IMG/VR virus record: IMGVR_UViG_3300020154_000003
Location: 302,039 to 366,038 of that record
Strand: one strand, 5' to 3'
Length of the DNA: 64,000 nt
Positions 8,203 through 60,040 of the stretch are shown here, piece by piece (positions within the stretch are counted from its first letter, which is position 1; each line of letters opens with the position of its first letter). The notes under the pieces were generated by a model. The model was given only the letters and a program-made list of their open reading frames with translations. It did not search any database and was not told the origin of the DNA. A program made the translations under genes and the position numbers.

Positions 8203-11200
8203 TTATGATGTTATTGGGGTTCTCTCCCCTGAAAAGTTAATAAATAATTGTCCTGTTGGTTGATCGATAAATGTCCATGTCGTACCACCATCAGTAGTTC
8301 TAAAATATCCGTTATTGGACGTGCTCGGATCAATAATTAAATGACCAGATGCAACACCAATATTTTCATCAATGAAATAAAGTGCTGAATATGCACGACC
8401 AAGAGTATTAACTGCAGTCCACGTAGTACCACCATCTGTTGATCTAAGTATTTTTGCATCGTTTCCAGTATAACTCATTATCACGAAAACAATATTATCA
8501 TCAATAGCCCATACTTGATTAACACCAAATCCATCAGCAGGTAGATTAGCACTAATATCAGTCCACGTATCGCCACCATCAATTGATTTGTATAATACGT
8601 TATCTGTACTCGTGCTATGTGTAAAGTATGCAACATTATTAGATGGTGCGAACGAAAGAGCCTTAGGTTGGCCAACAGGAGTCGCCAATATTTTAGTCCA
8701 TGTTGTACCACCATTTGTGGTTTTATAAACGCCTTGATAACCACTATTAAACCCGTGATACCCTATTGCGTAACCAATATTTAAATCTTTAAAGTGTATA
8801 CCATTTACAGCCTGACTAACTGCCCCAATAACTAACTCAGATCGAGACCAAGTTACACCGCCATCTGTTGATTTTAAAAATCCGTTAGCCCCAACAGCAC
8901 ATAACACATTACTATTTAATGCTAACACAGCCTTAATACCACCACCATTATATCCTGCAGAATTTAATGCAGGTCTTCTACTAGTCCATGTAGCACCTCC
9001 ATCATTTGTTGTAATTATGTGAGGGAATGTTGCGTTTGAAGTAGATATGGTTGCACCCATAATACCAACTTGCCCAACAAAACTAACATGACTATATCCA
9101 ACACTATCAATTGTGGTTTGTGTGTTGACTGAAGTGAAGTTAAGTCCACTATCAATTGATCTATATGCTGATTCGTTAGTTGTGTACCCAAAATAATCTG
9201 CTGCCCAAAATGATGGTATAGAACCAGCAGGTATTGTTATGGCTTCATTAACTGAGAACGGTAAAGGAGCGTCAATTATAGCACCGCTATCTGATGCTGT
9301 TATGGTGTTAATGTTAAGTGTTAGTGAAGTAGATGCGTCATCACTACTATTAGGACTGTGTGCGCTCATAGTTATCTGAATTGTCAGAGAATCGCTGCTT
9401 AACATAGTGAAGGATGATGAATTGTTTTCAGTACCATCAGTCACTTCGTTCGAATATATCACACTGCCATTCTTTATAATTTCCACTAAATTGCTTGCAT
9501 CACTATCACCTTCTACCGTTGCAATTTGCCCCAAATCAAACCCTAACGTAAATATTGTTCCGTTAGATAAACTTGGGGTTATAGCAATTTCATATTCTAA
9601 GAATATGTCTGCATTACGATTTCCAGTAGTTGCACCGGAAGAGTATACTCTTTCAATTTCAGTCATAAAGAATTCATATTCATTAATAACATATTCTTGT
9701 TGAACACAAATAATATCATCCCACGCAAATGAAAATGTAGTATCCTGTACTCTTCTAACAAATTCACTACCGTCATTACCTAAATGGTTTAATGACTGGT
9801 CAAAACTAACTCCCCTTCTATATGGAAATTTTTGCTTAGTAAATGCTGTGTTTCTAACCAGTACACCACCTTTCTTTAGAATTATTGTGGCACTTAATAA
9901 TTGATCTATGAATCTATGGAAAAAGCTATTGAACTTATTGATAAATGGATAAACGTTAGTAAACGTATATCCATTACTACGTACTGTTGGATGATTGCTT
10001 CGCTTTAAATATTCTTCATACAACTTCTGAACTGTTGGATATAACCCACCTTCATGATCTGTCAGAGTTTTTCTATTTTTAACGTTAATTAATCGTCTAT
10101 TAATAAGTTCAAGGTATTCCAAGAAACTAATCTCGGACAAGTTAGGAAACTCAAAGTCGCCAAAATTAATACCAGTATCAGTACTACCATCAGCAGTAAT
10201 GTAGAAGACATTTATTAAATATCCTATGTTCAAAGCACTAGTATTGAATAAAATTTGTTTCCTATTGGATGAATTCAAAGTAAAATCTTTACCATTTTGA
10301 AGGGTAAGACCATTAATCACAACTTTAATAGCATCCACGTTAGGTGGCTCATAGTCCATAACATAGATGTATTTGTTGATACCACTATTGTAGAAAAATT
10401 TAGAGGTTGAAAAACTATCAATTCTATGACTTTCAGATTTTTTAAGTATCGGATCATTACCAGACGATTTGATGTAACTGATAACCACAACAGGATTTGC
10501 AATCAGGTAATTTTTCAAATCATTATTAACCACAATAATTTCACCAGAATTGATCACATAATCACCAGTATATAGCGAGTTACCTTTGGTTAATGTCATT
10601 CCATTTACCACTAATTGTACCTCACCCAATGGGTCTTCCAATAATGGGATAGACAATCCATCAGGATTGGCAGTAATTTTTGTAACCACGTAATCTACTT
10701 GATTATAAGTACCACCAGTAGATTTGTCGTTGAGATATGTTAATGTAATAACGTCTTTATGTCCATTCGTATAACTTTGTGCAGTCCCTCCTATCAAGAT
10801 AGCCTCTTTACTATCTAAAGGATTTATGTAATAATCAGCACTAGGATCAGTTGATCCTGAACCCTTGGTTAAAGTAAGACCATTAAAACTAACCTGTATA
10901 TCACCTTGAGGAACTTCTGGAATAGTAAATGAAGATGCAGAGGCACCATAAGTGAATGGTATATTAATGTAAAGATAAGGTTTAGTTACACCGCTAGTTG
11001 TAATTGGAAAATTGTGTTCAAGGTTGTAATTCCAAACATCAAATTCAATACCTCTTGAAATATCAAGAGTTATGTCAACTTCTTTAGTATTCAACACTAA
11101 ATTACTATCATTTTGATAATAGTTTGGTGTCGTGTAATGTCTTCTTTCAGTAGTACCTGATTGTACCCACGACTTTTTGTTGTCAACTTTTCTATTCAAT

Positions 11201-12819
11201 CTAAAACCAACATCTCTGAATACATCCATGTATTGTTGTCCAGAATCGGTACTACCGCTTACTTGGAAATAAAATGTTTTCGTTTCCTTAGGTGCTATTG
11301 GGTAACCTTCAGAATTGTATGGTAATGAAGCTGAAGGTAAATCAGCAAGACTAACAGTTACTGTGTTAGGATTAATTTTCTCATCTACAGTATAGATGTA
11401 TTCAGTTATATTAATAAATGGCTCAGGTATACCGACCATTAATAACATTGTTTTTATTGCATCCCTAGTACCTTTGGCTTTGAAAAGATAGTTGGTATTT
11501 AACAAAATTCTTCTCCACAACTCAACGTCTACCTCAGGCGGTAACAAATCATTTACACTTCTTTGCTCAGTTGAAAAGAAGCTATTCAATAAATCATCAT
11601 CATTCACCAAAGTGACTGCATCCCAACCCATCGTTTTAGCTAAGTTCTTAACCAATAGATCAGGAATGTTCTTTTTCTTATTATAGGATAATTTATTGAT
11701 TGTAACTAAAGCATCAATGAATAATTTCACATTGTCGAAACTACGACCATAAATTCTCAATAATTTAGACATTTTTTGAGATTCAGTATTGTCGCCTTCG
11801 ATCAATGACTCTGGAACCAACATTCTAATCAATAGATCAGACTTAAATTGATCATACAGAGTTCCAATTGCACCTAATTCACTCAAGAACACATCGTAGT
11901 TATAACCATCGATGTCTACGTTATATCCATCTGATGCGCTCCATATTATTTCTTGATCGCTATATGTAACGCCACCGTCTTCAAGTTGAATTGGTGATTG
12001 AAATTCGGTACGGTATCCTTTTGCAATTTTTTCATTCAATAAATATGATTCTAATCTTGAAAGATTCGATTTAAATTTATTGAAGTGAAGTGGTTTGGGT
12101 TTCAAATGATATTTGAATTTTCCTGCAGTAGTTCCACCAGAGGATAACTCAGGGAAAGGATCGCCTTTAACGACCACACTTATATACTGCTTACTCGTAG
12201 AAAAGCCAGTAAAACCTAAAATTTCTAAAGTATTTTCATCAGGTGTATCTTCCCTCCAAATTAAATATTCGTTATATGAAATATTTAAATTACGTAACGC
12301 TTGATCTTGGGGTAATTGATTATTTGTACTGTTAATTACTAATCCAAACTTATTGACTAACGTATTGAATGGAATGATAAATGACGAAACATCTAATGAA
12401 GGATCATACACATAATCAACCACACTATTAGAATTTGTGAATGTTGAAATTTGTGAAGTAACACGAATACTGGCAGGAAATTCAAGAATGATATTTTCAA
12501 CTGAAACTCTTAATATTTCTCTAAGTGAGCCAAATCTAGCATACGAAGTTAAGTCAGTTTTGTCAAAATTTAGGGCAACTTCTTGGGTACTATTATATAT
12601 TACTTCTGATTCATCGTCAGTAATATTTAATGACTCTAACGTGATGGGCTTAACGAAGGAACTTAAGGTGTTCGAGTAATTTCTTACATTTCTTACACCA
12701 AAATTCGTATCTACTGTGAATCTTCCGAAAGTGAATACTGTTTCAGATGTTATATTTCTGAAACTTGCACCAACCAAATCAGAACCAAGACGCTTATTTC
12801 TAACTTTTACCTTTGCCAA
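8203..12819 (-). CDS. Large baseplate wedge-like protein with C-terminal Asp-box propeller
   Basis: 1538 aa, TTG start; KGTRDAI motif of baseplate proteins; three V.(F/V/I)NG(L/M)TL repeats; seven C-terminal Asp-box repeats. Confidence 0.65.
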   Translation of the reverse strand: MAKVKVRNKRLGSDLVGASFRNITSETVFTFGRFTVDTNFGVRNVRNYSNTLSSFVKPITLESLNITDDESEVIYNSTQEVALNFDKTDLTSYARFGSLREILRVSVENIILEFPASIRVTSQISTFTNSNSVVDYVYDPSLDVSSFIIPFNTLVNKFGLVINSTNNQLPQDQALRNLNISYNEYLIWREDTPDENTLEILGFTGFSTSKQYISVVVKGDPFPELSSGGTTAGKFKYHLKPKPLHFNKFKSNLSRLESYLLNEKIAKGYRTEFQSPIQLEDGGVTYSDQEIIWSASDGYNVDIDGYNYDVFLSELGAIGTLYDQFKSDLLIRMLVPESLIEGDNTESQKMSKLLRIYGRSFDNVKLFIDALVTINKLSYNKKKNIPDLLVKNLAKTMGWDAVTLVNDDDLLNSFFSTEQRSVNDLLPPEVDVELWRRILLNTNYLFKAKGTRDAIKTMLLMVGIPEPFINITEYIYTVDEKINPNTVTVSLADLPSASLPYNSEGYPIAPKETKTFYFQVSGSTDSGQQYMDVFRDVGFRLNRKVDNKKSWVQSGTTERRHYTTPNYYQNDSNLVLNTKEVDITLDISRGIEFDVWNYNLEHNFPITTSGVTKPYLYINIPFTYGASASSFTIPEVPQGDIQVSFNGLTLTKGSGSTDPSADYYINPLDSKEAILIGGTAQSYTNGHKDVITLTYLNDKSTGGTYNQVDYVVTKITANPDGLSIPLLEDPLGEVQLVVNGMTLTKGNSLYTGDYVINSGEIIVVNNDLKNYLIANPVVVISYIKSSGNDPILKKSESHRIDSFSTSKFFYNSGINKYIYVMDYEPPNVDAIKVVINGLTLQNGKDFTLNSSNRKQILFNTSALNIGYLINVFYITADGSTDTGINFGDFEFPNLSEISFLEYLELINRRLINVKNRKTLTDHEGGLYPTVQKLYEEYLKRSNHPTVRSNGYTFTNVYPFINKFNSFFHRFIDQLLSATIILKKGGVLVRNTAFTKQKFPYRRGVSFDQSLNHLGNDGSEFVRRVQDTTFSFAWDDIICVQQEYVINEYEFFMTEIERVYSSGATTGNRNADIFLEYEIAITPSLSNGTIFTLGFDLGQIATVEGDSDASNLVEIIKNGSVIYSNEVTDGTENNSSSFTMLSSDSLTIQITMSAHSPNSSDDASTSLTLNINTITASDSGAIIDAPLPFSVNEAITIPAGSIPSFWAADYFGYTTNESAYRSIDSGLNFTSVNTQTTIDSVGYSHVSFVGQVGIMGATISTSNATFPHIITTNDGGATWTSRRPALNSAGYNGGGIKAVLALNSNVLCAVGANGFLKSTDGGVTWSRSELVIGAVSQAVNGIHFKDLNIGYAIGYHGFNSGYQGVYKTTNGGTTWTKILATPVGQPKALSFAPSNNVAYFTHSTSTDNVLYKSIDGGDTWTDISANLPADGFGVNQVWAIDDNIVFVIMSYTGNDAKILRSTDGGTTWTAVNTLGRAYSALYFIDENIGVASGHLIIDPSTSNNGYFRTTDGGTTWTFIDQPTGQLFINFSGERTPITS

Positions 12820-16673: not shown

Positions 16674-16705
16674 AATAAAAAAATCCGTCATTTCTAACGG
16701 ATTTT
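16674..16705 (-). terminator. Intrinsic terminator
   Basis: Stem AAATCCGT/ACGGATTT with T-run on the minus strand. Confidence 0.7.
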
Positions 16706-16735
16706 CAAACTAAACAAAAAAACGAGAAACTATAA

Positions 16736-21175: not shown

Positions 21176-24100
21176 TTATTGAGGCTCCTGAGGAACTATT
21201 TGTCTCAATAAAATTTCCTTATTGTTTCTTTGCTTACCAGAATAAATATCGAAAAGAAGTTTCTTCAGAATTTCACCGATCTGCTGACCACTATAACCCA
21301 AGGCCAATAAATCATTTCCATTAACTTGCAGTTCTCGCAACGAGAACGGCATACCCATAGACCTCATCTCCTTGATACTGTCTTTTATCTTATCAGGAAT
21401 TATTTGGGAGTTGATCGCATCGGGATAAATCTTATACATGTTGAAGACGGTGATTTTGTTTTTAACTGCACTATCCGAATCGTCTTTAAATGCAAGTTCC
21501 AATGCTCTCATCTCATTGTATGTTGTAAGGTCACCTTTCAAGCTGTTCTTATAAAACTCAGCAGGGTTAGGTATGCCGTACTTTGTCAATTGGTAAATAA
21601 ATTCACCCATAGTTTTAACGTTGTTGAATTCAGCAACGTTGATCTCAGTGTCAACACTAAATATCTGTTCATACAAACCAGTTTCTTTCAATAATTGAGC
21701 ACCAACTGTTGGCTTACCTTTCTTCACAATCTTATCGAATTCAATCAATATTCTCTCAGGAGAAATTTCTCTTATTTTAAAGGCATTTTGTTGGATTGCC
21801 TTTAATGTTTGAGGTTCTATTTTGAAATCAAATCTGGATGCAAATTGAACAGCACGTAGCATTCTCAAAGGGTCTTCCGAAAAGGCTTTCGGATTAACCA
21901 TTCTGATGAGTTTATCTTTTATGTCCTGACTTCCACCGTATGGGTCAATCATTTGTCCATGAGAATCCTTAGCGATTGCATTTATGGTGAAATCCCTTCG
22001 TTCTAAGTCTTTTTCAATGGGTAACGTGTGATCTGACGTAACTTCAAATCCCTGATACCCACCCTGACCCGTGGCCCTTTCGGTTCTTGGTACTGCAATA
22101 TCCAACTCCCCTGTTTGAGGGGTCGTAAATTTGATGATTCCAAACGATTTACCGACATTATCCACGCGACCGTACTTGGCTAAGATTTTCTCAATATCTT
22201 CCAATGGAACGCCTGTAATGAGCAAATCCAAGTCTTTAGATGGTTTGTTCAACATCCCATCACGAACAGCACCACCCACGGAGTAGATTTTACCGCCTGC
22301 GAGTTCAATATCGTTTTTGAAGGGTAGCATGTCTAAATTTGCAATATTTTCGTTGATTTTGCCCTTTTTTGGCTTTAAAACGGTTTTTTTCTTGTCTTTC
22401 GTTGAAAAAACTAGCTTTTCAGACTGCAATTTAATGTTTTTCTTGAACTTCTTACCATATTTCTTACCAGTACCCTTTTTAACATAAGAAATAGTCATGT
22501 GAGGATGATAATCCTTAAATCTATTGGTGTAAGGGAGTTCTTTTAACGCCTTATTTAAGTTTTTCAAGGTTTGAGTAGGGACAACATCAAATTTAACTAC
22601 GTCAAAGTCAGGAGTTTCGAAGTGAGACACCTCTTTTAACTCTATTTCGATGGGTTTTGAGATGTCGATGATGCTTTCCACAATAGCCCTTACCTGATTC
22701 GCGTCAACTCCATCATGGAAGCCATAAAGAATGGTTATATGCGGGTCTTTTTCAATACCAAAGGTTGGTTTGTCATAAATATCGTCTTTTTCGATCATGG
22801 ACGTAATTTCATCCCAATTCGAAACCTTTATTTCTAACATCAACACACCGAATTCTACCTTCTCCTTTCTTTCGGCTTCGGCAAGCATTTCCTTAATTAA
22901 GGGTTCTGCCATGTCCTGTACCTCACCGTCTTGATCCATAAACTCGTCCCAATATCCGCTCATGTCTTGTATTTCAACCATCTCAGGCTGAAATTTAACA
23001 TCAGGTATTTTCTTCCACGTATATCCACCACCAGTTTCATAGTTATATGGCGAAATATCAACATGCATCAATATTCTGTTAGCTGTATCATAAACATATA
23101 TCGAAGTGTGACATTCGTATTCACTGTATCTTGTAAAACACCCATAATCACTATTACTAGTGACTACATCACACATTTTATCTGCAATATCATCGCATAT
23201 ACCACCAGAACCATACATTTCATCATATCCTTCATGATCTTGTTCCCATTCATTATATACTTCCTGAGCAACTGTAGCAAATTGTGTCTTCAAGGATTCC
23301 AATTTAGACTTCAATGCTAAAACAGGAGAATTTTCATTCAGAGATTCATACATCTCATCTGTATCGTCAACTATTTTAATTGATGATGGTTCGAATACAA
23401 TATAGTTGGTTGCATCAGGATTGGTTTTATCACTCATCATATTCCCCACGTATCCAGCTTTACTTAGAAACATTGATGCTGCTTTATTACTACCTAGCAC
23501 GGCAGCTAACCATTCATATACTTGTTTATTTGTGATGTCATAACGATATGATTCATCGTAAAAGTCACTTTGAAACTGTTCAATATCAATATCACTCAAA
23601 CCTAAATTTCTGCCGCGACCAAGTATGTATGAAGCTAAATGATCATCGATGGTTTCATCAAAATTCAAATACCTTCCGTCTCTCAATTGAACGTTCAATA
23701 TCTTATCACCATAGATGGATGCCACTTGAGGGTCATTAGTGAAGTAAAAACCCCATCCTCCCAATTCTCTACCGTCTGATGAACCTATTTTTTTTAATGA
23801 GAAAGCATTAAATTTACTTTTACTGGAAGTACCGTGGTAAGCATCGATTTCACTTACTCTACTTAATTCTTCCTTAATTGTTTGTGTTACTATCGCATTG
23901 ATGTCGCCTTGGTTGCAGGGAGTACTGGTGCCATCACCATTACCGTTTATTTGACACTTCTTCTTGATACCAACAGCTTTCGCATCAGGCATGTACGTCA
24001 TTACTCTTTCAAGAATAGCATTTTCAAGCTTGAGCAATTCAACCTGATCCATCTCTTTATGTGCTGAATATCCAAGATCATAATATGCAAGTACACCCTT

Positions 24101-25393
24101 TCTAAAACCAAAATTCTCTTCAGTAAAATCCGCGCTTCTCACACCATGATCCATGAGTTCTTTAATAACCGCAAGCATTAGTCCAACATTGCGTTTCAAT
24201 TGAGGATTTTGAATCGTTGCCGATTTCTTAACTATTTCATTAAATGCAGGTCTGTCAGATTTTTTTATCATATCTGCAATTTGACTCCATCCAGCAGGTG
24301 ATAAATCCATAAAACCCATGAAGTCAGCGATTATGTCAATTACTCTTTCAGGATCAACGTCAAGTTTTTCACGAAGAATTATATAAATTTTGTCGTTCGG
24401 TTCGTTTAATCTATATGACCCATAAAAACGTCCAATATGTTTTGTGTTCTTACCAACCAATCTTGATGCTTCAATTGCTTCACCTCTATCTGAGGTAATC
24501 TTCAAGATTTTATTACCTCCAATATCAAACGCATAACCTTGAGTTCCCTTACCTAAATTAGCAACAATGCTATGACCTAATTTATTTGCTACTTTAGTGG
24601 CGAAATCATTGATATTAGAATTCTGCCTCATGAGATGTCTTTCTATATCTTCTACCGCCTCATCAACAACTACATTCTCCAATGCCAGTACATCCGCATT
24701 AGGTTTGTCCTTATCACCAGTCATCCCATAATCAAAAAATCCTATCTGACCATTCTTCTTATATCCTAAATTATTGGCACTCAAATCCAAACTTTTCATG
24801 TTATTGGATTTAAGTTCTTTCACAATATTTAAAAGTGAATTGTAGAAATGTTTTTCATTGGGATAATCATTAAGTAAATGCTCAATGTCTGCAGCAAAAT
24901 GTTCATACATTTGAGGTTTACTGGTAGCCATGTCGATAAAGGCTACAGCAAAAAATTTATGGCCAAATCTACTTTGCAATAAATCATCTAAATTTTCAAA
25001 AAGTGTATCAAATTTGGTGGGATCAACCGTTAGTTTTTCACAGATAATGAGGAATACTTTTTTGTTAACACCCCTTTTGTCGATTTCGTAAACTTGATAT
25101 ACATCTGCTAGAAGTTTGTTCCGTTTGCCTTTGATTTTTAAAGCTTCAATAGCTTCAGAGGGATCAATAGTCAATTTATAAACCTTGTCACCAGAAATGT
25201 ATGCGATACCATTGTATCCTTCGCCAGCATAAGTTGGGAGTTTTAAGATTCCTAATTTACCTACCACATCCTTTAATATTTCATCAGCTACTTTTCTATC
25301 CAAAATAGTTTCATTGATAATATTGGAAGCAATGAAGTCTTCAGCAATTACTCGTATAAATTCTCTTCTAATAATTTCTGGCTGTTTACTCAT
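21176..25393 (-). CDS. Polyvalent protein: kinase-like x2, ADP-ribosyltransferase-like, unknown domain, 2H phosphoesterase (Acb1/gp57B-like), CCA-adding nucleotidyltransferase
   Basis: Kinase 1 GEGYNG/VYK/DLSANN/FDYG; kinase 2 GKGTQG/LKI/DFTEEN/YDLG; AYHGT..GFYFT; HITI and HMTI; VGGAVRD..DLD, RRDFTINA, DPLRMLRA. Confidence 0.85.
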   Translation of the reverse strand: MSKQPEIIRREFIRVIAEDFIASNIINETILDRKVADEILKDVVGKLGILKLPTYAGEGYNGIAYISGDKVYKLTIDPSEAIEALKIKGKRNKLLADVYQVYEIDKRGVNKKVFLIICEKLTVDPTKFDTLFENLDDLLQSRFGHKFFAVAFIDMATSKPQMYEHFAADIEHLLNDYPNEKHFYNSLLNIVKELKSNNMKSLDLSANNLGYKKNGQIGFFDYGMTGDKDKPNADVLALENVVVDEAVEDIERHLMRQNSNINDFATKVANKLGHSIVANLGKGTQGYAFDIGGNKILKITSDRGEAIEASRLVGKNTKHIGRFYGSYRLNEPNDKIYIILREKLDVDPERVIDIIADFMGFMDLSPAGWSQIADMIKKSDRPAFNEIVKKSATIQNPQLKRNVGLMLAVIKELMDHGVRSADFTEENFGFRKGVLAYYDLGYSAHKEMDQVELLKLENAILERVMTYMPDAKAVGIKKKCQINGNGDGTSTPCNQGDINAIVTQTIKEELSRVSEIDAYHGTSSKSKFNAFSLKKIGSSDGRELGGWGFYFTNDPQVASIYGDKILNVQLRDGRYLNFDETIDDHLASYILGRGRNLGLSDIDIEQFQSDFYDESYRYDITNKQVYEWLAAVLGSNKAASMFLSKAGYVGNMMSDKTNPDATNYIVFEPSSIKIVDDTDEMYESLNENSPVLALKSKLESLKTQFATVAQEVYNEWEQDHEGYDEMYGSGGICDDIADKMCDVVTSNSDYGCFTRYSEYECHTSIYVYDTANRILMHVDISPYNYETGGGYTWKKIPDVKFQPEMVEIQDMSGYWDEFMDQDGEVQDMAEPLIKEMLAEAERKEKVEFGVLMLEIKVSNWDEITSMIEKDDIYDKPTFGIEKDPHITILYGFHDGVDANQVRAIVESIIDISKPIEIELKEVSHFETPDFDVVKFDVVPTQTLKNLNKALKELPYTNRFKDYHPHMTISYVKKGTGKKYGKKFKKNIKLQSEKLVFSTKDKKKTVLKPKKGKINENIANLDMLPFKNDIELAGGKIYSVGGAVRDGMLNKPSKDLDLLITGVPLEDIEKILAKYGRVDNVGKSFGIIKFTTPQTGELDIAVPRTERATGQGGYQGFEVTSDHTLPIEKDLERRDFTINAIAKDSHGQMIDPYGGSQDIKDKLIRMVNPKAFSEDPLRMLRAVQFASRFDFKIEPQTLKAIQQNAFKIREISPERILIEFDKIVKKGKPTVGAQLLKETGLYEQIFSVDTEINVAEFNNVKTMGEFIYQLTKYGIPNPAEFYKNSLKGDLTTYNEMRALELAFKDDSDSAVKNKITVFNMYKIYPDAINSQIIPDKIKDSIKEMRSMGMPFSLRELQVNGNDLLALGYSGQQIGEILKKLLFDIYSGKQRNNKEILLRQIVPQEPQ

Positions 25394-25452: not shown

Positions 25453-26184
25453 TTATTTCAGGTTTTGTTTCCTCTTTTGAATGTCAAGAATCGTTTCAAC
25501 CACAACTTTCTTAAATTTACCTGAGTCGATAAATTCGTTAATAACATTTTCGATTTTCTCTCTAGTATACATCTCAGTGATAACGTTTCTGAAGGTTTCT
25601 TCAACCAATTTATCAAAGGTGTTACCACCCAAAACATCAATCATAGTCTTACGAATCTGCTCATTCAATAAAGCGGGGTTAACTGCACCATAATGCTGCA
25701 CTTCATTCAAAGGCTGTTGTGGAGCACCAGCACCAACATACTGGCTTGTAGAATACTCGGCTAATTGTTGTGACAATCCAGCATTCGGATTGCTTGTAGG
25801 CTTTTTAGTGATTAATTCCTTGGCTCTAGCCATTTGTTCCTCAAAAAAAGTATCTCTCTTATCAACCATTTGACTTTGTTGTACTGGTTGAGTATACTCA
25901 TTTACTGCTTGTCTACTTGCAGACTGTGTTGGAGGATTATAGTGTGATTTAGCAACAGCTACTGGCACTCCGTGATTGGCTTCAGTACTTTCTGATACTG
26001 CTCTGATTGCCTGAACCGCAGGAGTAGGAACACCACTGTTTACTGAATTAAGTAATTCAACTATGAATCTCTTGCTATCACTTTTACGAATCCCACTACC
26101 AGTACCAAGAGTTTCTTCCTTGATTATTGATTGATTTCTTCTTTCTTCAATCTCTTTCTTAATATTATCTAAATTAAAATTCAT
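25453..26184 (-). CDS. Hypothetical protein, possible internal head protein
   Basis: 243 aa, Q/P-rich linker, several IxE/LNE motifs. Confidence 0.6.
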   Translation of the reverse strand: MNFNLDNIKKEIEERRNQSIIKEETLGTGSGIRKSDSKRFIVELLNSVNSGVPTPAVQAIRAVSESTEANHGVPVAVAKSHYNPPTQSASRQAVNEYTQPVQQSQMVDKRDTFFEEQMARAKELITKKPTSNPNAGLSQQLAEYSTSQYVGAGAPQQPLNEVQHYGAVNPALLNEQIRKTMIDVLGGNTFDKLVEETFRNVITEMYTREKIENVINEFIDSGKFKKVVVETILDIQKRKQNLK

Positions 26185-26848
26185 TTTGATTATCTTGTTT
26201 TTTTATGGTATTATCAAACTCACGTTTCTTTTGATCAAACCAGCTTTTTGAAGCATTATCATTGTCCACACCCTTGTTTCTATTGAAGAATGAAGATTTT
26301 TTAAATCTATCCAACTGTGTCTGAAACCAATTTTTATCGTTAGTCATCCCTTGATAAGTGTCAGGCTGGTTTATTGATTTATCACCTGAAACTTGCTGTG
26401 GTTCTTCACTGCTTGGCTCTGCAGCCAATATTATTTGGGTCATTTGACTATCCTTCGGATTATAATTTGGCCTGTTTGTGCGCATATAATTCGCATCAGT
26501 CTCAAATTTTTTCAATGTTTTAGCCATTGAAGTAATCCCATCCAATCTGAATAATCTCCAGCCCGGAATCTCATCATTTGGCCTCTTTGGTGCGTTCCCT
26601 GTATCGGTAGCACCTGCTTGCTGCCATGCTCTTAAAACTAAATTCCCTGCTTTAGATACACCTAAAACATACGGTTCAATTGTACGATAACCTCTATTCA
26701 CGGTTTCATCGCCTGCATAGTAAATAAAGACAACATCTTTATTGTTGATTGCATTGGCGACAGTATTCCTATCGACCCATTCATTCAAACTTCTAAGTTT
26801 GTCGATTTGGGCCTTAAGATCGTCCTTTCCGAGAATAGGTTTATCCAT
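26174..26848 (-). CDS. Stand-alone WYL domain protein
   Basis: FIYY...YRTIEPYVLG...LRAWQ...WRLFRLDGI. Confidence 0.75.
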   Translation of the reverse strand: MDKPILGKDDLKAQIDKLRSLNEWVDRNTVANAINNKDVVFIYYAGDETVNRGYRTIEPYVLGVSKAGNLVLRAWQQAGATDTGNAPKRPNDEIPGWRLFRLDGITSMAKTLKKFETDANYMRTNRPNYNPKDSQMTQIILAAEPSSEEPQQVSGDKSINQPDTYQGMTNDKNWFQTQLDRFKKSSFFNRNKGVDNDNASKSWFDQKKREFDNTIKKQDNQNEF

Positions 26849-27108
26849 TATACTTTCGATCCGTCATAAGGATTATTCGAAGAATAAATGTTCTTTGCTT
26901 GTTGAGCATTTCTAGTAACGATGTCTGTACGACTACCAATACTACCATTTTTTTCTCCTTTACCTAACTCATCACCATCCGACAATGAATCAGGGTGTGT
27001 TCCTTCATAGGCATTATTTCTACCGTACTTGTTTTTAGCAAGTTCCTTTTGTCTAAATTGAACGCTGTACTCATCAAGAGGTACGTTCTTTCCATCGATA
27101 ATTGGCAT
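26848..27108 (-). CDS. Small protein with internal two-fold repeat
   Basis: RQKELAKNKYGRNNAY vs RNAQQAKNIYSSNNPY. Confidence 0.65.
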   Translation of the reverse strand: MPIIDGKNVPLDEYSVQFRQKELAKNKYGRNNAYEGTHPDSLSDGDELGKGEKNGSIGSRTDIVTRNAQQAKNIYSSNNPYDGSKV

Positions 27109-27155
27109 TTTGTTTCTGTTAACTAAATTATTAAGTTATTTATCAATAAATACTC

Positions 27156-27989
27156 TTATTGATTTAATGTATCATCATTATCTACTGACCATACAATTAA
27201 TTTTTGCTTTGCAAGAGCGATAAAATCATCCAAATGAGGTGTTTTATCTAAATCTCTTATCTGATCGGTTGAAAACCATGCGTATTCAGTATGCTCTTCG
27301 TTAATAACTACGGCAGGTTGACCCTCAACGGAGGTAACAAACACATATTCTACGCTATCTTCAGAAGTTCTAATCACAAAATCACCAATGAAATCAGTTA
27401 TTTGAAGACCAGCTTCTTCCCAAATTTCTCTTTTAGTCCCTTCCTCAGGAGTTTCGCCTGCTTCAATTTTACCACCAACTAACGCCCATTTATTAGGTTC
27501 CCAATGATCGTCTGGATTACGCTTTACAAGCAATACCTTTTCATCACCATCTCCACGACTAAAAATCACTGCCAAACCATTCTTTTGCAATCCTTCAAAC
27601 TCTTCAGTAATCCCCAAGTTAACAGCACCGCCTTGTGCATGTAGTGTTCTATTATCTAATTGAGGCATGAACATAACGTTAGTATTTTTTTTACTTGCCA
27701 CAAGGTTCCTTTCTGCACCTAATGTTCTTTCCACAAAATCCTTCATGTCCTTTCCACCTGCCAACTCATACTCATCTTTCTGAACGGCAGGATTAGCATA
27801 ATCGAAAAAGTTTTTCAATCTTTTAAGCATGGCATAAGTACAAATACCATTATTTACAATCCATTTTCCTCTTTTCGTACCGTTTGTAACTCCATTAACA
27901 GTTGCAAGCTTTGCACGAATCTTTTCAACGATATGTTGTGGTATTCTATATGGTCTTTCTTTGCTCTTATTATAGAGTTCTCTATTCAT
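27156..27989 (-). CDS. Nudix hydrolase with uncharacterised N-terminal domain
   Basis: Full Nudix box GGKIEAGETPEEGTKREIWEEAGL. Confidence 0.85.
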   Translation of the reverse strand: MNRELYNKSKERPYRIPQHIVEKIRAKLATVNGVTNGTKRGKWIVNNGICTYAMLKRLKNFFDYANPAVQKDEYELAGGKDMKDFVERTLGAERNLVASKKNTNVMFMPQLDNRTLHAQGGAVNLGITEEFEGLQKNGLAVIFSRGDGDEKVLLVKRNPDDHWEPNKWALVGGKIEAGETPEEGTKREIWEEAGLQITDFIGDFVIRTSEDSVEYVFVTSVEGQPAVVINEEHTEYAWFSTDQIRDLDKTPHLDDFIALAKQKLIVWSVDNDDTLNQ

Positions 27990-28531
27990 TACTTCAACTG
28001 TTTTATTAAATCACCTTTATCTCTGTCGGATAAATCCGCGAACAGTGATTTGATTTTCACCACTTTATCGCTCATTAAATCATTATCGTTTTTCTTATTT
28101 TTCAATGAAGAATCTTTTCTTTTAGTAATCACATCTTCAATGATGCTTGCCATTTCAGATTCTGTTAATGTTTGATCTTCCTTACTTTTAGGTTTAAAGA
28201 GATCAGTAATTTTACTTGAAAAGAGCAAATACTTATCCTTAACTTCCTCGCTCAAACCATCCCATCCTTTATCTCCAAGTCCATCGTCACCGTCAAAATA
28301 ATTGTAGGCTACCCTAGCTATTCGTAAATTGATAGGCTCATTACCTTCAGATTCGTTATAGTACCCGAAAATTCCCAAAAAATCGTTGGCATAATGCTGA
28401 GAATGTATCCTCGCATTATGATCCGTGGTTCCGTCTGCCGTTACCTGATTAGGTTGATTCTGTGGTTTATCGTCATTTCCAATCAAATTGCCATCAGAGT
28501 CCAAAATTTCTGAGATTTCACGCTTTTTCAT
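27989..28531 (-). CDS. Hypothetical protein
   Basis: 180-aa ORF coupled to the Nudix gene, upstream motif at 28544. Confidence 0.65.
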   Translation of the reverse strand: MKKREISEILDSDGNLIGNDDKPQNQPNQVTADGTTDHNARIHSQHYANDFLGIFGYYNESEGNEPINLRIARVAYNYFDGDDGLGDKGWDGLSEEVKDKYLLFSSKITDLFKPKSKEDQTLTESEMASIIEDVITKRKDSSLKNKKNDNDLMSDKVVKIKSLFADLSDRDKGDLIKQLK

Positions 28532-40656: not shown

Positions 40657-43600
40657 TTAATTAGACTGCATATCAGGAGTGGTCACAACATCTAACCTAC
40701 CACCATTCATGCATATTGCAGTTATTATATCTTCTGAATGCGCTGGAGAACTACCATTTGTTGTTGGATTAGTAAGTACAGGAGTAGTTCCGAATGGGAA
40801 TCTATAACGACCACTAGCCCAAGTAAATGATTTGTTTGATGTATCCATTATAATCTTAAACATATACTGTTTACCAATTGTTTCACCAGTATAATTGAAC
40901 GATGTTACGTTACCAGTAACATTAAGTAAGAATATATCGGCAGTTGTAAGGTCTACTACAACATTTCCAGCAACACTACCGCTAAATACAACTAGAGTTG
41001 GTGTTATTTGACTGGTTATACCTGTCACATAATTCACATCAACCAACGAATGTTTGGTGAAACCAGTTGCATAATTACCTTTATATTCAATACCTGCTTT
41101 TATCGCTCTACCATCAGTAAATGTAGTACCTGTTTTAGTGATAATGAATCTAGCAAGTTCATCATCATCATTGTTTCTAAAAGTAACATCAAATCCGTAT
41201 GGTGAGAACAACACATCATTAGCAGTGCCATCATCTTCAATGATTTGTTGAAGTACTTGAGGTTGCTCATCTGGTTTATCGTATTGATTTGCATTACTTA
41301 CGTCTAAATGTGCATACCTACCGAAGTTATTCCCGTTGGCAGTCGCTTCAATACCTGAACTACGAACTTTAAATTCATTATATTTATCTGTCAAATCATC
41401 AAAGCTGATGGTCGTTCCATTAAAGTGTTTTACTTCAAAAGAAGTTGAACCCATCGTAAAACCATCATCATATTCAGTTGTTACCGAAAGAGCAGCATTA
41501 AAAGCACTGTTACCGAACGTAACTGTACTGCTATGACTCAAACTAGTTGAGTCTAACGAAGTATCACCACTCAATGAACCACCCAATATTATCACACCAT
41601 TATTGTCTGTCAAACCATTACCAACAAGAATGCTAGTACTACCACCAGTTAACGTGGAAGTTATGCCAGTTACATAAGCAACATCAGGTATTGATCTGGC
41701 AGTATATAATTCATGTAGATTTTCATTATACTCAATGACAGCATTTCGCATCACTAATTTACCAGCATCAAGTAATCCATTTTCGTCTAATCGGTAAAGT
41801 CCTGTATTTAATGTTTTGGGATCGTGGTATGTATATCCGTTTAATAATATCTTATTTTCAGGCAGTAATGAGACAAACCCACCAGTTAGACTTATACTAC
41901 CACCACCGTATCCTAATTTGAAATCATGGTTAATAGTACCATCGATATTCAAGTTTATTAAATTACCTCCTTGTCCATTTTCATCTGATAGATTATTACC
42001 ATTATATCTATTAAATGCTCCCGATGCTAAAATAGTACCGTTTGGCAACCAACATACTTTACTTACCTCAGTAGATGGTATATGAAATGTATATGTAAAA
42101 CCAGTACCCGGATCAAAACTACCCACATTAGTTCCACCACTAGTTATAAGCTTTAATCTAGGATTATTGAATCTGGCAATAATAACTTCACCAGTCTCTT
42201 GATTAACATCAAACCACATACCTCTTTCACCGTCAGAAAGAACATTAAAACCAGCAACTCTCGAACCGTCTGAATTTAATTTTGTAAAACCCGGAGAAAA
42301 CACACCATCATAATAATTATACGCACCGCAGGCATATATTGATCCACCAGACAATTGAAATACTCTCTCAACCCAACTATTGGCTGTTCCACCTGCGCCA
42401 CCCCATCTAAATCCACTACCATAAGTAAATCCTGTATCAACACCCCCATTCTCATTTAGACGAACAATACTCCATGCACTAGTCCCATCAAATTCTGTGA
42501 AAGTACCACCTACAAGAATCTTATCATCATCCTGTACGAAGATTGAATAAACAGAACCGTTAAAACCAGTACCGCCTGAGAAAGTAGCGTCATAACTACC
42601 ATCTGAATTCAATCTAGCTATTCTATTTACCGTATTTCCATCAATTTGAGTAAAATCTCCACCAATAATTATCTTACCATCTTGTTGCACATCGACAGCC
42701 CTTATTGTGTTATTAATGGAGGCAGGGTTAAAATCACCACTATTAGTACCATTTTCAATTAAGACTGTTATATATTTTTTAGTTAAATCGGTATTCCATG
42801 ATGTGAAATTACCTACAACAATCACTTTATATGCTCCATCACTCGGAAATTGTGGATCAATAACTTTAGTTTGAGAAACATAGCCAGAATTTCCACCTAG
42901 ACCAATATTAAATCCACTTTCAACATCGAAAAATAACCCCATTCCGTAATTTTGTAGCTGAAGTCTACTACTAGCGATATTAATTTCAGTATGTCCTTCA
43001 AGGGTTCCTCCGAGTCCAAAGTTTCCTGTACCACCTGTGTTCACTGTTCTAACCAATCCATTACTAGCGGTTTCACCTTGAGATATTACCCAAGCCTTAT
43101 CAACTAATGATCTATCAACATAATTTTCTGAATAATCAGCATCATAGATTGCAGCACTTCCACCGATAATGATTTGATCAATCACTGGAATAGTCCCAAT
43201 ATTTACTTCTCCATTACTTTTGAATCTAAAAACACCGGGATTGTTTAAATTAACATCTGTTGCGTATGTACCAGCATAAATAAAACCATCTGAATTTTCT
43301 ATAATAGTATACGAGTAAATCTGTGAATCCAGAGAGTCTCCAAAATTTAACTCATGTATACCATCAGCAGATAATTTACACAAATACTTAGTAGCCGTAC
43401 CGTTATAATTTTGAAAACTACCTGCAACAAGTATTTTATCACCTTCGGTGAGTTTCATTGCATTTATATCATTATCAAAACCAGTACCACTAGAGAAAGT
43501 AGTGTCATATGTGCCATCCTCATTAAGTCTATGAATACGACCTGTATGTCCTTCAAAAGTTGAGAACTCACCTCCTATGATCAATTTTCCTGATGACTGT

Positions 43601-59953: not shown

Positions 59954-59968
59954 TGTACCTTTGAAAAG

Positions 59969-60040
59969 TAGGGATTAAGGGATTTGCACCCATATCTGTG
60001 TTCGCAATGAACACCGTTCTAAAAGTTAAACTAAGCCCCT
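59969..60040 (-). ncRNA. Degenerate 72-nt tRNA-like RNA unit 1
   Basis: Cloverleaf AGGGGCT-TA-GTTT/GAAC-G-GTGTT CATTGCG AACAC-AGAT-ATGGG TGCAAAT CCCTT-AATCCCT-A; lacks D-loop GG, TTC, U33 and CCA. Confidence 0.7.

What the first reader, a model, noticed from the sequence alone, without database searches (positions are those of the whole stretch)
21176..25393. Six-domain polyprotein: kinase, kinase, ART, unknown, 2H phosphoesterase, CCA-adding enzyme
Seen (approximate spans): kinase-like 24720-25250 and 24065-24570, ART-like YHGT/GFYF 23370-23850, unknown 22930-23330, 2H HxT..HxT 22400-22860, class II nucleotidyltransferase 21176-22330. Established: phage 2H enzymes (Acb1) degrade CBASS cyclic nucleotides, phage kinases and ARTs modify host proteins, and CCA enzymes repair tRNA ends. 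I do not know this combination in one chain. Inference: a bundled host-takeover and counter-defence payload.
Basis: partly seen in the sequence, partly recalled or inferred. Interest (0 to 1): 0.88.

Follow-up and report, generated by a model that had tools for sequence, protein, structure and literature searches.

The report
Six-enzyme polyvalent protein, huge phage
A 366-kb uncultured phage encodes one 1405-residue protein that strings together six intact enzyme modules (two stripped-down kinases, an ADP-ribosyltransferase, a small thiol enzyme, a 2H phosphoesterase and a tRNA CCA-adding enzyme); it is the most compact member of a large, undescribed, heavily domain-shuffled branch of the known "polyvalent protein" class, and its conserved core looks like a tRNA 3'-end repair cassette.

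Summary
ORF 21176-25393(-) is uninterrupted at 1405 aa, and all six segments are real domains. Pfam supports ART-PolyVal, 2H and a class II CCA-adding enzyme. The two N-terminal segments are paralogous, truncated protein-kinase-like domains with every catalytic residue invariant. The "unknown" segment is an autonomous ~150-aa module (1,223 relatives) with a conserved Cys-His-Asp set and repeated sub-threshold transglutaminase-like hits. An 89%-identical orthologue in two other samples, gap-free and with per-module dN/dS of 0.01-0.13, excludes a chimera or decay. The combination is not unique. More than 200 proteins share the CCA module at 50-70% identity, occupy the same syntenic slot in a clade of ~250-370-kb uncultured phages, and show 60 architectures among 120 members. 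The usual order is kinase(1-3) – a novel Cys motif – variable region – CCA ± 2H. The 2H module lies within 35 residues of CCA in 46 of 65 cases, on either side, which points to tRNA 3'-end healing more than to an Acb1-like role. Conceptually this is a polyvalent protein (Iyer et al. 2017), but CCA-anchored versions, the Cys motif and the thiol module are not in the literature I could search. Verdict: new variant of a known kind. Virion delivery and proteolytic processing remain untested.

The parts
21176..25393 (-). Whole ORF, 1405 aa plus stop: polyvalent multi-enzyme protein
   Evidence: Single uninterrupted ORF. 89%-identical gap-free orthologue in two other samples; overall dN/dS 0.055. 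Same syntenic slot in about 25 loci.
24674..25393 (-). Kinase-like module 1 (aa 1-240): truncated protein-kinase-like domain. Gly-loop G57/G59/G62, K73, E80, D203...N208, D221-x-G223
   Evidence: Paralogue of module 2 (E=1e-20). Catalytic residues invariant or nearly so in family alignment A1. dN/dS 0.037.
24014..24673 (-). Kinase-like module 2 (aa 241-460): Gly-loop G281/G283/G286, K298, E305, D422...N427, D439-x-G441
   Evidence: 27-copy alignment A2 has all these positions invariant. AF2 core pLDDT above 90. All top Foldseek hits in the PDB are kinases or aminoglycoside phosphotransferases, probability about 1.0, E about 2e-4. Copies in relatives hit Pfam APH/ABC1/WaaY. dN/dS 0.126.
23864..24013 (-). 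Conserved Cys motif (aa 461-510): ER..SYMP...V.VKKKC-x12-CNQGDI...I.E. Function unknown
   Evidence: Invariant C480, G484, T489, S490, C493, N494, G496. Occurs once per chain after the last kinase copy in 93-99 of 120 relatives. Found nowhere else in 1.56 Mb of loci. dN/dS 0.009. Poorly modelled, pLDDT 40-55. Synonymous sites are not extra conserved.
23354..23863 (-). ADP-ribosyltransferase module (aa 511-680), H520 / Y552 / E668
   Evidence: Pfam ART-PolyVal PF18760 E=1.2e-9, above gathering. The alignment of 11 full ART cores shows H, Y and [D/E] conserved, with VFDP in most relatives and VFEP here. dN/dS 0.035.
22904..23323 (-).
   Evidence: 39 and then 1,223 relatives, mostly free-standing at about 150 aa. 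Cys and Asp invariant, His at 90% or more. AF2 pLDDT 93.4, with Cys at a helix N-terminus and His and Asp on the following strands. Sub-threshold Transglut_core/DUF553 hits in 5 of 9 other members scanned, best E=4.8e-4. JGI names two members transglutaminase-like cysteine protease. However, there is no Foldseek neighbour in PDB or BFVD. dN/dS 0.086.
22364..22843 (-). 2H phosphoesterase module (aa 851-1010), H885-I-T and H965-M-T
   Evidence: Pfam 2_5_RNA_ligase2 PF13563 E=1.8e-11, above gathering. Acb1 PF23474 E=2.6e-4 and LigT 1.4e-3 are both below gathering. PHROG 755 and TIGR02258 give weaker matches. Within 35 aa of CCA in 46 of 65 relatives. dN/dS 0.054.
21179..22333 (-). Class II CCA-adding enzyme module (aa 1021-1405): GGAVRD 1040, DLD 1054-1056, RRD 1132, EDPLR 1173, plus body and tail domains
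   Evidence: PF01743 1.6e-23, PF12627 3.2e-17, PF13735 4.8e-5. NCBIfam's best match is the CCA tRNA nucleotidyltransferase PRK13299, covering 14-390 of 396 positions at 5.8e-52 but below its equivalog cut-off. PDB 1MIV at 4e-31. phrog_2244 tRNA nucleotidyltransferase at 2e-69. 50-70% identical in more than 200 fusion proteins. dN/dS 0.034.

Best explanation
The gene encodes a polyvalent, multi-enzyme phage protein: six catalytically intact modules kept in one chain by a clade of uncultured huge phages. Shown: every module retains its catalytic residues and is under purifying selection; the gene sits at one orthologous locus whose domain content is reshuffled between phages; the kinase, Cys motif and CCA module form the recurrent frame. 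Inferred: the C-terminal part is a tRNA 3'-end repair and maturation cassette. The 2H phosphoesterase would open the 2',3'-cyclic phosphate left by metal-independent host tRNA nucleases. The CCA-adding enzyme would then rebuild the acceptor end, and would also finish phage tRNAs that lack an encoded CCA. This parallels the HD-phosphohydrolase domain fused to the E. coli CCA enzyme. The small thiol module may clean another 3'-end adduct, or act as a peptidase or deamidase. The two truncated kinases and the H-Y-E ADP-ribosyltransferase most likely modify host proteins, or possibly nucleic-acid ends, to aid takeover, as proposed for other polyvalent proteins. Whether the protein travels in the virion, and whether it is cleaved into pieces, is unknown.
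For: Domain identities and motifs. Kinase fold and invariant catalytic residues across 27 copies; Pfam APH/ABC1/WaaY hits in relatives. ART H-Y-[D/E] as in the polyvalent ART clade. Thiol module. Purifying selection on every module (dN/dS 0.009-0.126). Family and plasticity: more than 200 relatives and 60 architectures among 120, all in one syntenic slot. 2H-CCA coupling: within 35 residues in 46 of 65, on either side of CCA. A phage tRNA-Gln in the window lacks an encoded CCA. Relatives also carry PF08302 (tRNA-ligase CPDase), GNAT, InPase (a domain named in the polyvalent-protein paper) and a weak T4 RNA-ligase match. Established knowledge: 2H enzymes process 2',3'-cyclic phosphate RNA ends and CCA enzymes restore tRNA ends (PMC7824862, PMC9503650, PMC5512222).
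Against: No biochemical data exist for any member. A 2H CPDase normally leaves a 2'- (or 3'-) phosphate, and no phosphatase module was recognised that would free the end for CCA addition. The CCA module scores below NCBIfam's equivalog cut-offs (177 against 290 bits), so a CC-adding, A-adding or poly(A) activity is not excluded. The kinase module is much more widespread than the CCA fusion: only 20 of 127 kinase-selected representatives carry CCA, so the modules need not cooperate. The gene is not next to portal, MuF or head genes, and there are no tRNA genes near it in 18 related loci. The thiol module is next to a CCA gene in only 1 of 7 free-standing contexts. PADLOC gave no match.
Confidence: 0.6

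Rival explanations
1. Independent-effector model. The modules do not cooperate. The 2H module is an Acb1-like sponge or degrader of cyclic-oligonucleotide immune signals (CBASS, type III CRISPR, 2'-5' oligoadenylate-like), as Iyer et al. proposed for polyvalent-type 2H domains. The CCA enzyme is one more independent payload.
For: Pfam Acb1 PF23474 gives a weak hit here (E=2.6e-4) and is among the precomputed hits in many relatives. Iyer et al. argue that polyvalent 2H domains never associate with RNA-repair enzymes and may degrade nucleotide signals. In 19 of 65 relatives the 2H module lies 99-676 residues from CCA.
Against: The Acb1 hit is below the gathering score while the generic RNA-end 2H family is above its own. 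Tight 2H-CCA adjacency in both orders in 46 of 65 proteins is hard to explain without functional coupling.
Confidence: 0.25
2. Housekeeping model. The protein mainly matures the phage's own tRNAs (CCA addition), and the other modules are accessory metabolic or regulatory domains fused for co-expression, without a counter-defence role.
For: The window's tRNA-Gln lacks an encoded CCA. Free-standing CCA enzymes are common in large phages that carry many tRNAs (PMC7824862). The gene neighbours replication and nucleotide-metabolism genes.
Against: Hosts already have a CCA enzyme. ART-PolyVal, truncated kinases, GNAT and InPase are conflict-type domains (PMC5512222). Extreme domain shuffling at one locus (60 architectures among 120) is typical of arms-race genes and not of housekeeping ones.
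Confidence: 0.2
3. True polyprotein. The chain is cut at the inter-module linkers, by a prohead-type protease or by its own thiol module, to release separate enzymes, possibly inside the capsid.
For: [L/I/M]-x-E tripeptides occur in all four inter-module linkers (aa 506, 685, 833, 1013). They occur upstream of CCA in 110 of 113 relatives and at the end of ART modules. Precedents for processing of polyvalent proteins are discussed in PMC5512222.
Against: The same L-x-E lies inside the N-terminus of free-standing CCA enzymes, so it is an ancestral structural feature. [LI]xE occurs 23 times in the chain, so chance matches are likely. The thiol module is present in only 7 of 120 relatives. No prohead protease was found in the window.
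Confidence: 0.15
4. NAD-dependent end-healing pathway within one chain. 2H opens the cyclic phosphate to a 2'-phosphate, the ART module removes it in a Tpt1/KptA-like manner, the neighbouring NUDIX gene clears the ADP-ribose product, and CCA rebuilds the end.
For: The 2H then KptA logic is established for RNA repair (PMC9503650). A NUDIX gene is conserved three genes upstream in 23 loci.
Against: The ART is of the H-Y-[D/E] clade and not the KptA type. Full ART cores co-occur with 2H in 6 of 11 proteins, the same rate as 2H overall (65 of 120), so there is no enrichment.
Confidence: 0.07
5. Artefact: an assembly chimera or a fused pseudogene.
For: None found.
Against: An identical-length orthologue occurs in two other samples with the same neighbours. 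There are no frameshifts or stops, and dN/dS is 0.055. Synteny holds across about 25 loci.
Confidence: 0.01

Closest known systems
Polyvalent proteins of phages and conjugative elements (Iyer, Burroughs, Anand, de Souza, Aravind 2017, PMC5512222)
   Same: A large single chain combining several disparate catalytic domains. It contains the ART clade named after them (Pfam ART-PolyVal, H-Y-D/E), a 2H phosphoesterase, and kinase domains lacking the C-terminal subdomain. Relatives add GNAT, ParB and InPase. It is phage-encoded, and its domain architectures are very variable.
   Different: A CCA-adding enzyme is never mentioned in that paper (0 occurrences). Here it is the most conserved module. That paper reports that polyvalent-type 2H domains are not linked to RNA-repair enzymes, whereas here 2H lies within 35 residues of CCA in most cases. 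There is no MuF, portal, zincin-peptidase or ArdC hub domain. The Cys motif and the transglutaminase-like module are not among its listed domains (transglutaminase has 0 occurrences). Virion association is unproven.
E. coli-type multifunctional CCA-adding/repair enzyme (class II head fused to an HD phosphohydrolase domain)
   Same: A class II nucleotidyltransferase physically coupled to a phosphoesterase that could clear blocked tRNA 3' ends. NCBIfam PRK10885 matches the head at 5e-50.
   Different: The phosphoesterase here is a 2H domain and not HD, and it can sit before or after the CCA module. The CCA body and tail resemble the Bacillus type (PRK13299, 1MIV). It is embedded in a 1405-aa multi-enzyme chain.
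Free-standing phage tRNA nucleotidyltransferases and RNA-repair genes of jumbo phages (Iyer et al. 2021, PMC7824862)
   Same: The same enzyme family is found in many large phages and is proposed there to restore CCA ends after host attack on tRNAs.
   Different: Those are separate genes of about 350-450 aa. Here the enzyme is fused to kinases, ART, 2H and a thiol module, and the locus is a hot spot of domain shuffling.
Acb1 anti-CBASS 2H phosphodiesterase
   Same: 2H fold with two HxT/S motifs, phage-encoded.
   Different: The Pfam Acb1 model is below its gathering score (21.2 against 27 bits). Context ties this 2H to a tRNA enzyme and not to signal degradation.
Polymorphic toxin systems (constant N-terminal part, conserved junction motif, variable C-terminal domains)
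   Same: A constant N-terminal frame (kinase copies) is followed by a short, extremely conserved peptide motif and then a highly variable set of domains. There are many architectures at one locus.
   Different: The products are repair and modification enzymes and not toxins. The far C-terminal CCA module is conserved too. There is no sign of DNA-level recombination joints at the motif, and no adjacent cassette arrays were seen.

Membership tests
Polyvalent proteins (Iyer et al. 2017) | Multiple domains with disparate catalytic activities in one polypeptide | tested here: met
   Six modules from five different enzyme superfamilies.
Polyvalent proteins (Iyer et al. 2017) | Encoded by a phage, plasmid or conjugative element | tested here: met
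   366-kb IMG/VR viral contig. Neighbours include baseplate gp25/gp6-like genes, DNA polymerase, helicase and RNR.
Polyvalent proteins (Iyer et al. 2017) | Contains domain families characteristic of the class (ART of the H-Y-D clade, 2H, truncated kinase, InPase and others) | tested here: met
   PF18760 above gathering. H-Y-[D/E] active site. InPase PF18823 in a kinase-sharing relative.
Polyvalent proteins (Iyer et al. 2017) | Located near late/virion genes or fused to MuF or portal | tested here: inconclusive
   Baseplate genes lie 4.5 kb downstream on the same strand, but replication genes lie directly upstream. There is no MuF or portal. The promoter/terminator scan is at chance level.
Polyvalent proteins (Iyer et al. 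2017) | Packaged in the virion and delivered with the DNA | not testable with these tools
   This needs virion proteomics of an isolate. No cultured relative exists: DNA polymerase is about 23% identical to the nearest deposited phage.
Class II CCA-adding enzyme | Head-domain motifs A (GGxVRD...DxD), B (RRD) and D (EDxxR), plus neck/body RNA-binding domain | tested here: met
   GGAVRD 1040, DLD 1054, RRD 1132, EDPLR 1173. PF01743 and PF12627 above gathering. 1MIV alignment.
Class II CCA-adding enzyme | Scores as an equivalog of a characterised CCA enzyme (as opposed to poly(A) polymerase or CC-/A-adding enzymes) | tested here: not met
   Best NCBIfam hit is PRK13299 at 177 bits against a cut-off of 290. 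The ranking is CCA > PcnB (117) > A-adding (77). This supports the superfamily and the likely activity, but not equivalog status.
Class II CCA-adding enzyme | Adds C-C-A to tRNA 3' ends | not testable with these tools
   This needs an enzyme assay.
2H phosphoesterase superfamily | Two H-x-T/S motifs in a duplicated fold; Pfam family above threshold | tested here: met
   H885-I-T and H965-M-T. PF13563 at 44.8 bits against a cut-off of 27.
Acb1 (anti-CBASS 2H) | Matches the Acb1 family model above its curated cut-off | tested here: not met
   PF23474 at 21.2 bits against a cut-off of 27.
ART superfamily, H-Y-[E/D] clade (ART-PolyVal) | His in strand 1, Tyr in strand 2, acidic residue in strand 5; family model above cut-off | tested here: met
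   H520, Y552, E668, with D in most relatives. PF18760 at 39.5 bits against a cut-off of 31.2.
Protein-kinase-like superfamily | Gly-rich loop, ATP-binding Lys, helix-C Glu, catalytic Asp...Asn (D+5), Mg-binding Asp-x-Gly | tested here: met
   All are invariant in 27 copies. N1 and N2 both keep them.
Protein-kinase-like superfamily | Kinase fold | tested here: met
   AF2 core pLDDT above 90. All top 50 Foldseek PDB hits are protein kinases or aminoglycoside phosphotransferases, with probability mostly 0.96-1.0. E-values are only about 2e-4 and TM about 0.3 because the C-lobe is mostly missing.
Protein-kinase-like superfamily | Sequence match to a curated kinase family | tested here: inconclusive
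   This protein gives only ABC1 at E=0.021, and none of the 27 copies reaches significance. Copies in more distant relatives do hit APH, ABC1 and WaaY.
Truncated polyvalent-protein kinase clade of Iyer et al. 2017 | Loss of the C-terminal kinase subdomain with the active site retained, plus clade-specific residues listed in their File S2 | tested here: inconclusive
   The domain ends about 20 residues after the DxG motif, so the C-terminal subdomain is missing. Their alignment is not available, so clade identity could not be tested.
Transglutaminase-like / papain-like cysteine peptidases | Cys at a helix N-terminus, His and Asp on the following beta-strands, all conserved | tested here: met
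   C733 and D779 invariant, H762 at 90% or more in 39 sequences. Secondary-structure placement in the pLDDT-93 model.
Transglutaminase-like / papain-like cysteine peptidases | Significant sequence or structure match to the family | tested here: inconclusive
   Pfam Transglut_core/DUF553 hits in 5 of 9 other members scanned, all below cut-off (best 20.0 against 20.5 bits), with no hit for the window's own copy. Foldseek finds no neighbour in PDB or BFVD.

The most novel reading that the evidence does not exclude
A clade of uncultured huge phages carries, at one fixed locus, a polymorphic-effector-like gene. It has a constant chassis (1-3 truncated kinases plus a novel KKKC-x12-CNQGD peptide) that carries interchangeable enzyme payloads. 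The commonest payload is a new tRNA acceptor-end repair cassette (CCA-adding enzyme + 2H phosphoesterase, sometimes with a new thiol hydrolase). On this reading the cassette lets the phage reverse host immune nucleases or modifiers that attack tRNA 3' ends, making it a dedicated counter-defence against tRNA-3'-end-targeting immunity delivered as one protein.
Probability: 0.3. Interest if true: 0.75.

Novelty: new variant of a known kind. Interest (0 to 1): 0.6.

Why it matters
Host defences that disable tRNAs are now known to be widespread, for example anticodon nucleases, acceptor-end nucleases and tRNA-modifying toxins. Known phage answers are spare tRNAs and the T4 kinase/ligase repair pair. 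A fused 2H–CCA cassette conserved in hundreds of huge-phage proteins would be a different, testable answer aimed at the tRNA 3' end. The window's protein is the most compact member of the family: 98% of its chain is assigned to modules, against a median of 47% in relatives. That makes it the natural entry point for biochemistry.

The work also defines three items that current databases do not annotate:
- a kinase-like family with 2,414 representative clusters
- a 1,223-member small thiol-enzyme-like family
- an extremely conserved Cys motif of unknown function

The work also shows that domain shuffling of polyvalent proteins can occur at a single orthologous locus.

Tried and rejected
- **Close relatives among deposited phages.** There are none at DNA level. 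At protein level only the CCA part matches.
- **Sequence searches of N1, N2 and the middle segment against the PDB.** Single sequences and profiles gave nothing significant.
- **Pfam on all 27 kinase copies.** Nothing significant. The kinase assignment rests on the invariant motifs, the fold search and hits in more distant relatives.
- **Fold search for the unknown module.** No neighbour in PDB or BFVD despite a pLDDT-93 model. The transglutaminase-like reading therefore stays provisional.
- **Junction [M/L/I]-x-E as a relic start codon or protease site.** Rejected as specific evidence, because free-standing CCA enzymes carry the same L-x-E 6-15 residues inside their N-terminus.
- **Cys motif as a DNA-level recombination joint.** Rejected, because the same-codon fraction is equal inside and outside the motif (0.49-0.57).
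- **Cys motif as a tag shared by other proteins.** It was not found outside these ORFs in the window or in 1.56 Mb of loci.
- **ART acting as a Tpt1-like partner of 2H.** No co-occurrence enrichment: 6 of 11 against 65 of 120.
- **General linkage between the thiol module and CCA genes.** Seen in only 1 of 7 free-standing contexts.
- **PADLOC defence models.** No hit.
- **Promoter/terminator scan.** At chance level.
- **tRNA genes near the gene in 18 related loci.** None.
- **Prohead protease in the window.** Not found.

Full report
**1. The observation**

The window has low GC (~35%) and almost all of its genes are on the minus strand. A single ORF runs from an ATG at 25393 to a stop at 21176: 1405 codons with no internal stop. 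The database copy of the protein sits on a 366-kb contig that IMG/VR lists as viral.

The neighbours on the same strand are:
- ribonucleotide reductase
- a helicase
- a family-B-like DNA polymerase
- a NUDIX protein
- a glycosyltransferase
- gp25-like and gp6-like baseplate wedge proteins

This is therefore a huge tailed phage. It has no close cultured relative. There is no DNA match in 50,697 phage records, and its DNA polymerase is about 23% identical to the nearest deposited phages.

**2. The six segments**

*CCA enzyme, aa 1021-1405.*
- Pfam PolyA_pol head (E=1.6e-23), the RNA-binding neck (3.2e-17) and the C-terminal tRNA_NucTran2_2 domain all match.
- PHROG 2244, tRNA nucleotidyltransferase, matches at 2e-69.
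- NCBIfam's best hit is the Bacillus-type CCA enzyme, aligned over almost its whole length.
- The best solved structure is 1MIV.
- Motifs A, B and D are present.
- The score is below NCBIfam's equivalog cut-offs, so the exact nucleotide specificity is inferred and not shown.

*2H module, aa 851-1010.* It matches PF13563 above threshold and has both HxT motifs. The Acb1 and LigT models match only below threshold.

*ART module, aa 511-680.* It matches ART-PolyVal above threshold. An alignment with ten relatives shows the H-Y-[D/E] triad. This is the configuration Iyer et al. describe for ARTs of polyvalent proteins.

*The two N-terminal segments.*
- They are paralogues (29% identity, E=1e-20).
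- I aligned 27 copies from related loci. The Gly-rich loop, the Lys, the helix-C Glu, the Asp...Asn catalytic pair (spacing 5) and the Asp-x-Gly are all invariant.
- An AlphaFold model built on that alignment has a core pLDDT above 90.
- Its Foldseek neighbours in the PDB are exclusively protein kinases and aminoglycoside phosphotransferases, with probability about 1. E-values and TM-scores are moderate, as expected for a domain that ends about 20 residues after the DxG motif.
- Neither sequence profiles against the PDB nor Pfam on the 27 copies reach significance. Copies in more distant relatives do hit APH, ABC1 and WaaY.
- Iyer et al. describe a kinase clade in polyvalent proteins that has lost the C-terminal subdomain. 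Whether this is the same clade could not be tested.

- It is an autonomous module. There were 39 relatives in a first search and 1,223 with a profile, and almost all are free-standing proteins of about 150 aa without any Pfam domain.
- A GGIC Cys, an Asp and a YE.G.GY.WKK stretch are invariant, and a His is nearly so.
- The model is very confident (pLDDT 93.4). It places the Cys at the N-terminus of a helix and the His and Asp on the next strands.
- Foldseek finds no neighbour in the PDB or in BFVD.
- Five of the nine other members scanned give sub-threshold hits to Transglut_core or the transglutaminase-like DUF553, with the best at 20.0 bits against a cut-off of 20.5. The window's own copy gives no hit. 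JGI's pipeline named two members transglutaminase-like cysteine protease.
- I therefore read it as a minimal transglutaminase/papain-like thiol enzyme, with roughly 60% confidence.

**3. Not an artefact, and every module is in use**

An 89%-identical protein of exactly 1405 residues occurs in two independent Logan assemblies with the same neighbours. A codon-wise comparison gives an overall dN/dS of 0.055. Per module the values are 0.037, 0.126, 0.009 (Cys motif), 0.035, 0.086, 0.054 and 0.034. Synonymous sites are near saturation, so the ratios are approximate, but none of the modules is decaying.

**4. The family**

- A full-length search found more than 200 proteins of 800-2400 aa whose CCA module is 50-70% identical to this one.
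- I mapped the six modules onto the best 120. CCA is in 120 (by selection), the kinase module in 104 (1-3 copies), 2H in 65, a full ART core in 11, and the thiol module in 7.
- There are 60 different architectures among the 120. A median of 53% of each chain remains unassigned, against 2% for the window's protein.
- The usual order is [~335-aa unknown N-terminus] – kinase(s) – Cys motif – variable region – CCA – [2H] – [tail].
- In about 25 IMG/VR loci (contigs up to 372 kb) the gene occupies the same position between the same neighbours. This is one orthologous locus with reshuffled content.
- An exhaustive profile search with the kinase+motif alignment found 2,414 representative clusters, 221 of them at E≤1e-30. 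Most are long proteins with up to six copies. Only 20 of 127 new representatives carry a CCA module.
- Some of these others carry InPase (a domain named in the polyvalent-protein paper), cytidylyltransferase-like domains and a weak T4 RNA-ligase match.
- Other lineages also embed CCA enzymes in giant proteins, for example a 4072-aa ORF in L052.

**5. The Cys motif**

A motif lies directly after the last kinase copy: ER..SYMP…V.VKKKC-x11-12-CNQGDI..L…I.E. Two Cys and several Gly/Thr/Ser/Asn are invariant.
- It is the most strongly constrained part of the chain (dN/dS 0.009).
- It occurs once per protein and nowhere else in the window or in 1.56 Mb of related loci.
- It is poorly modelled.
- Synonymous sites inside it are no more conserved than outside it, so it is a functional peptide and not a DNA recombination joint.
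- Its function is unexplained.

**6. How it most likely works**

*Shown.* There are six intact enzyme modules, all selected. The frame is conserved and the middle is variable. The 2H module lies within 35 residues of CCA in 46 of 65 proteins, after it in 48 cases and before it in 17.

*Inferred.*
- 2H and CCA act together on tRNA 3' ends. The 2H enzyme opens the 2',3'-cyclic phosphate left by metal-independent nucleases, and the CCA enzyme rebuilds the acceptor end.
- This is functionally analogous to the HD domain fused to the E. coli CCA enzyme (established knowledge; compare NCBIfam PRK10885).
- The same enzyme would complete phage tRNAs such as the window's tRNA-Gln, which has no encoded CCA.
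- A weak point is that no phosphatase was recognised to remove the phosphate a CPDase leaves behind.
- By analogy with polyvalent proteins and with the T7 kinase and T4 Alt (PMC5512222), the kinases and the ART most likely modify host proteins. Action on nucleic-acid ends is not excluded.
- The thiol module's substrate is unknown. It is fused directly before CCA in two relatives. It lies 12 nt upstream of a free-standing CCA gene in one independent contig, beside NadR-like, PnuC and Macro genes. It does not do so in six other contexts.

**7. Comparison with what is known**

The protein fits the definition of a polyvalent protein: multiple disparate activities in one phage protein, with ART-PolyVal, 2H and a truncated kinase. 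Two defining expectations remain open. Proximity to virion genes is ambiguous, and delivery in the virion is untestable here.

The differences from the published class are:
- the CCA-adding enzyme as the conserved anchor ("CCA" never occurs in PMC5512222)
- the tight 2H–CCA coupling, where that paper states polyvalent-type 2H domains were never seen with RNA-repair enzymes
- the absence of the usual hub domains (zincin peptidase, ArdC, MuF)
- the new Cys motif
- the transglutaminase-like module

The jumbo-phage survey (PMC7824862) lists CCA enzymes and 2H enzymes only as separate RNA-repair genes. Five literature searches found no description of this fusion family. The library lacks most subscription-journal papers, so absence there is not proof.

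**8. Verdict**

Novelty: new variant of a known kind.

Interest: 0.6. It is still a large, unannotated and experimentally tractable family, with a specific and testable hypothesis about repair of tRNA 3' ends.

Noticed in passing
window 23864-24013 (-): An extremely conserved peptide (ER..SYMP...V.VKKKC-x12-CNQGDI...I.E) follows the last kinase copy. It has a dN/dS of 0.009, occurs once per chain in most relatives and nowhere else, is poorly modelled by AlphaFold, and has no known function.
   Followed up: partly
window 59968-60040 (-): tRNA-Gln (anticodon TTG) whose gene is followed by TTTT. The CCA end is not encoded, so it needs post-transcriptional CCA addition.
   Followed up: partly
window 36208-56525 (-): Six consecutive very large ORFs (736, 742, 1250, 1452, 1372 and 1184 aa) with essentially no annotation. 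Two of them (40657-44409 and 44439-48797) share phrog_5490 of unknown function, so they may be paralogues.
   Followed up: no
window 8203-12819 (-): A 1538-aa ORF with a TTG start and no PHROG match, lying downstream of the baseplate-wedge genes. It may be a tail or fibre component.
   Followed up: no
window 25453-28531 (-): A block of five genes is conserved upstream of the polyvalent gene in about 20-23 loci: 180 aa, NUDIX (277 aa with a 140-aa N-terminal extension), 86 aa, 224 aa (weak WYL hit, E=3e-4, below cut-off) and 243 aa. Their functional link to the polyvalent gene is unknown.
   Followed up: partly
L052 (IMGVR_UViG_3300011013_003468), ORF of 4072 aa: A different phage lineage embeds a CCA-type nucleotidyltransferase (GGxVRD at residue 1839) in a 4072-aa protein. 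L045-L047 and L079 also show 700-1100-aa CCA fusions.
   Followed up: no
L084:6536-16765 (GCA_040384025.1, 378-kb contig): A gene cluster of TonB-dependent receptor, PnuC NMN transporter, NadR-like protein, the free-standing thiol module and a free-standing CCA-type enzyme, with a Macro-domain gene about 5 kb further on. This suggests a link between NAD/ADP-ribose metabolism and the tRNA-end enzymes.
   Followed up: no
relatives P0025-P0120 (for example L006:8948-9965): About 70 of 104 relatives carry a conserved ~335-aa N-terminal region, with no Pfam match, before the first kinase copy. The window's protein lacks it.
   Followed up: no
window 16679-16706 (-): A terminator-like hairpin with a 12-bp stem and a T-run lies just upstream of the gp25-like baseplate gene. 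It may mark a transcript boundary between the polyvalent-gene block and the baseplate genes. The overall scan was at chance level.
   Followed up: no
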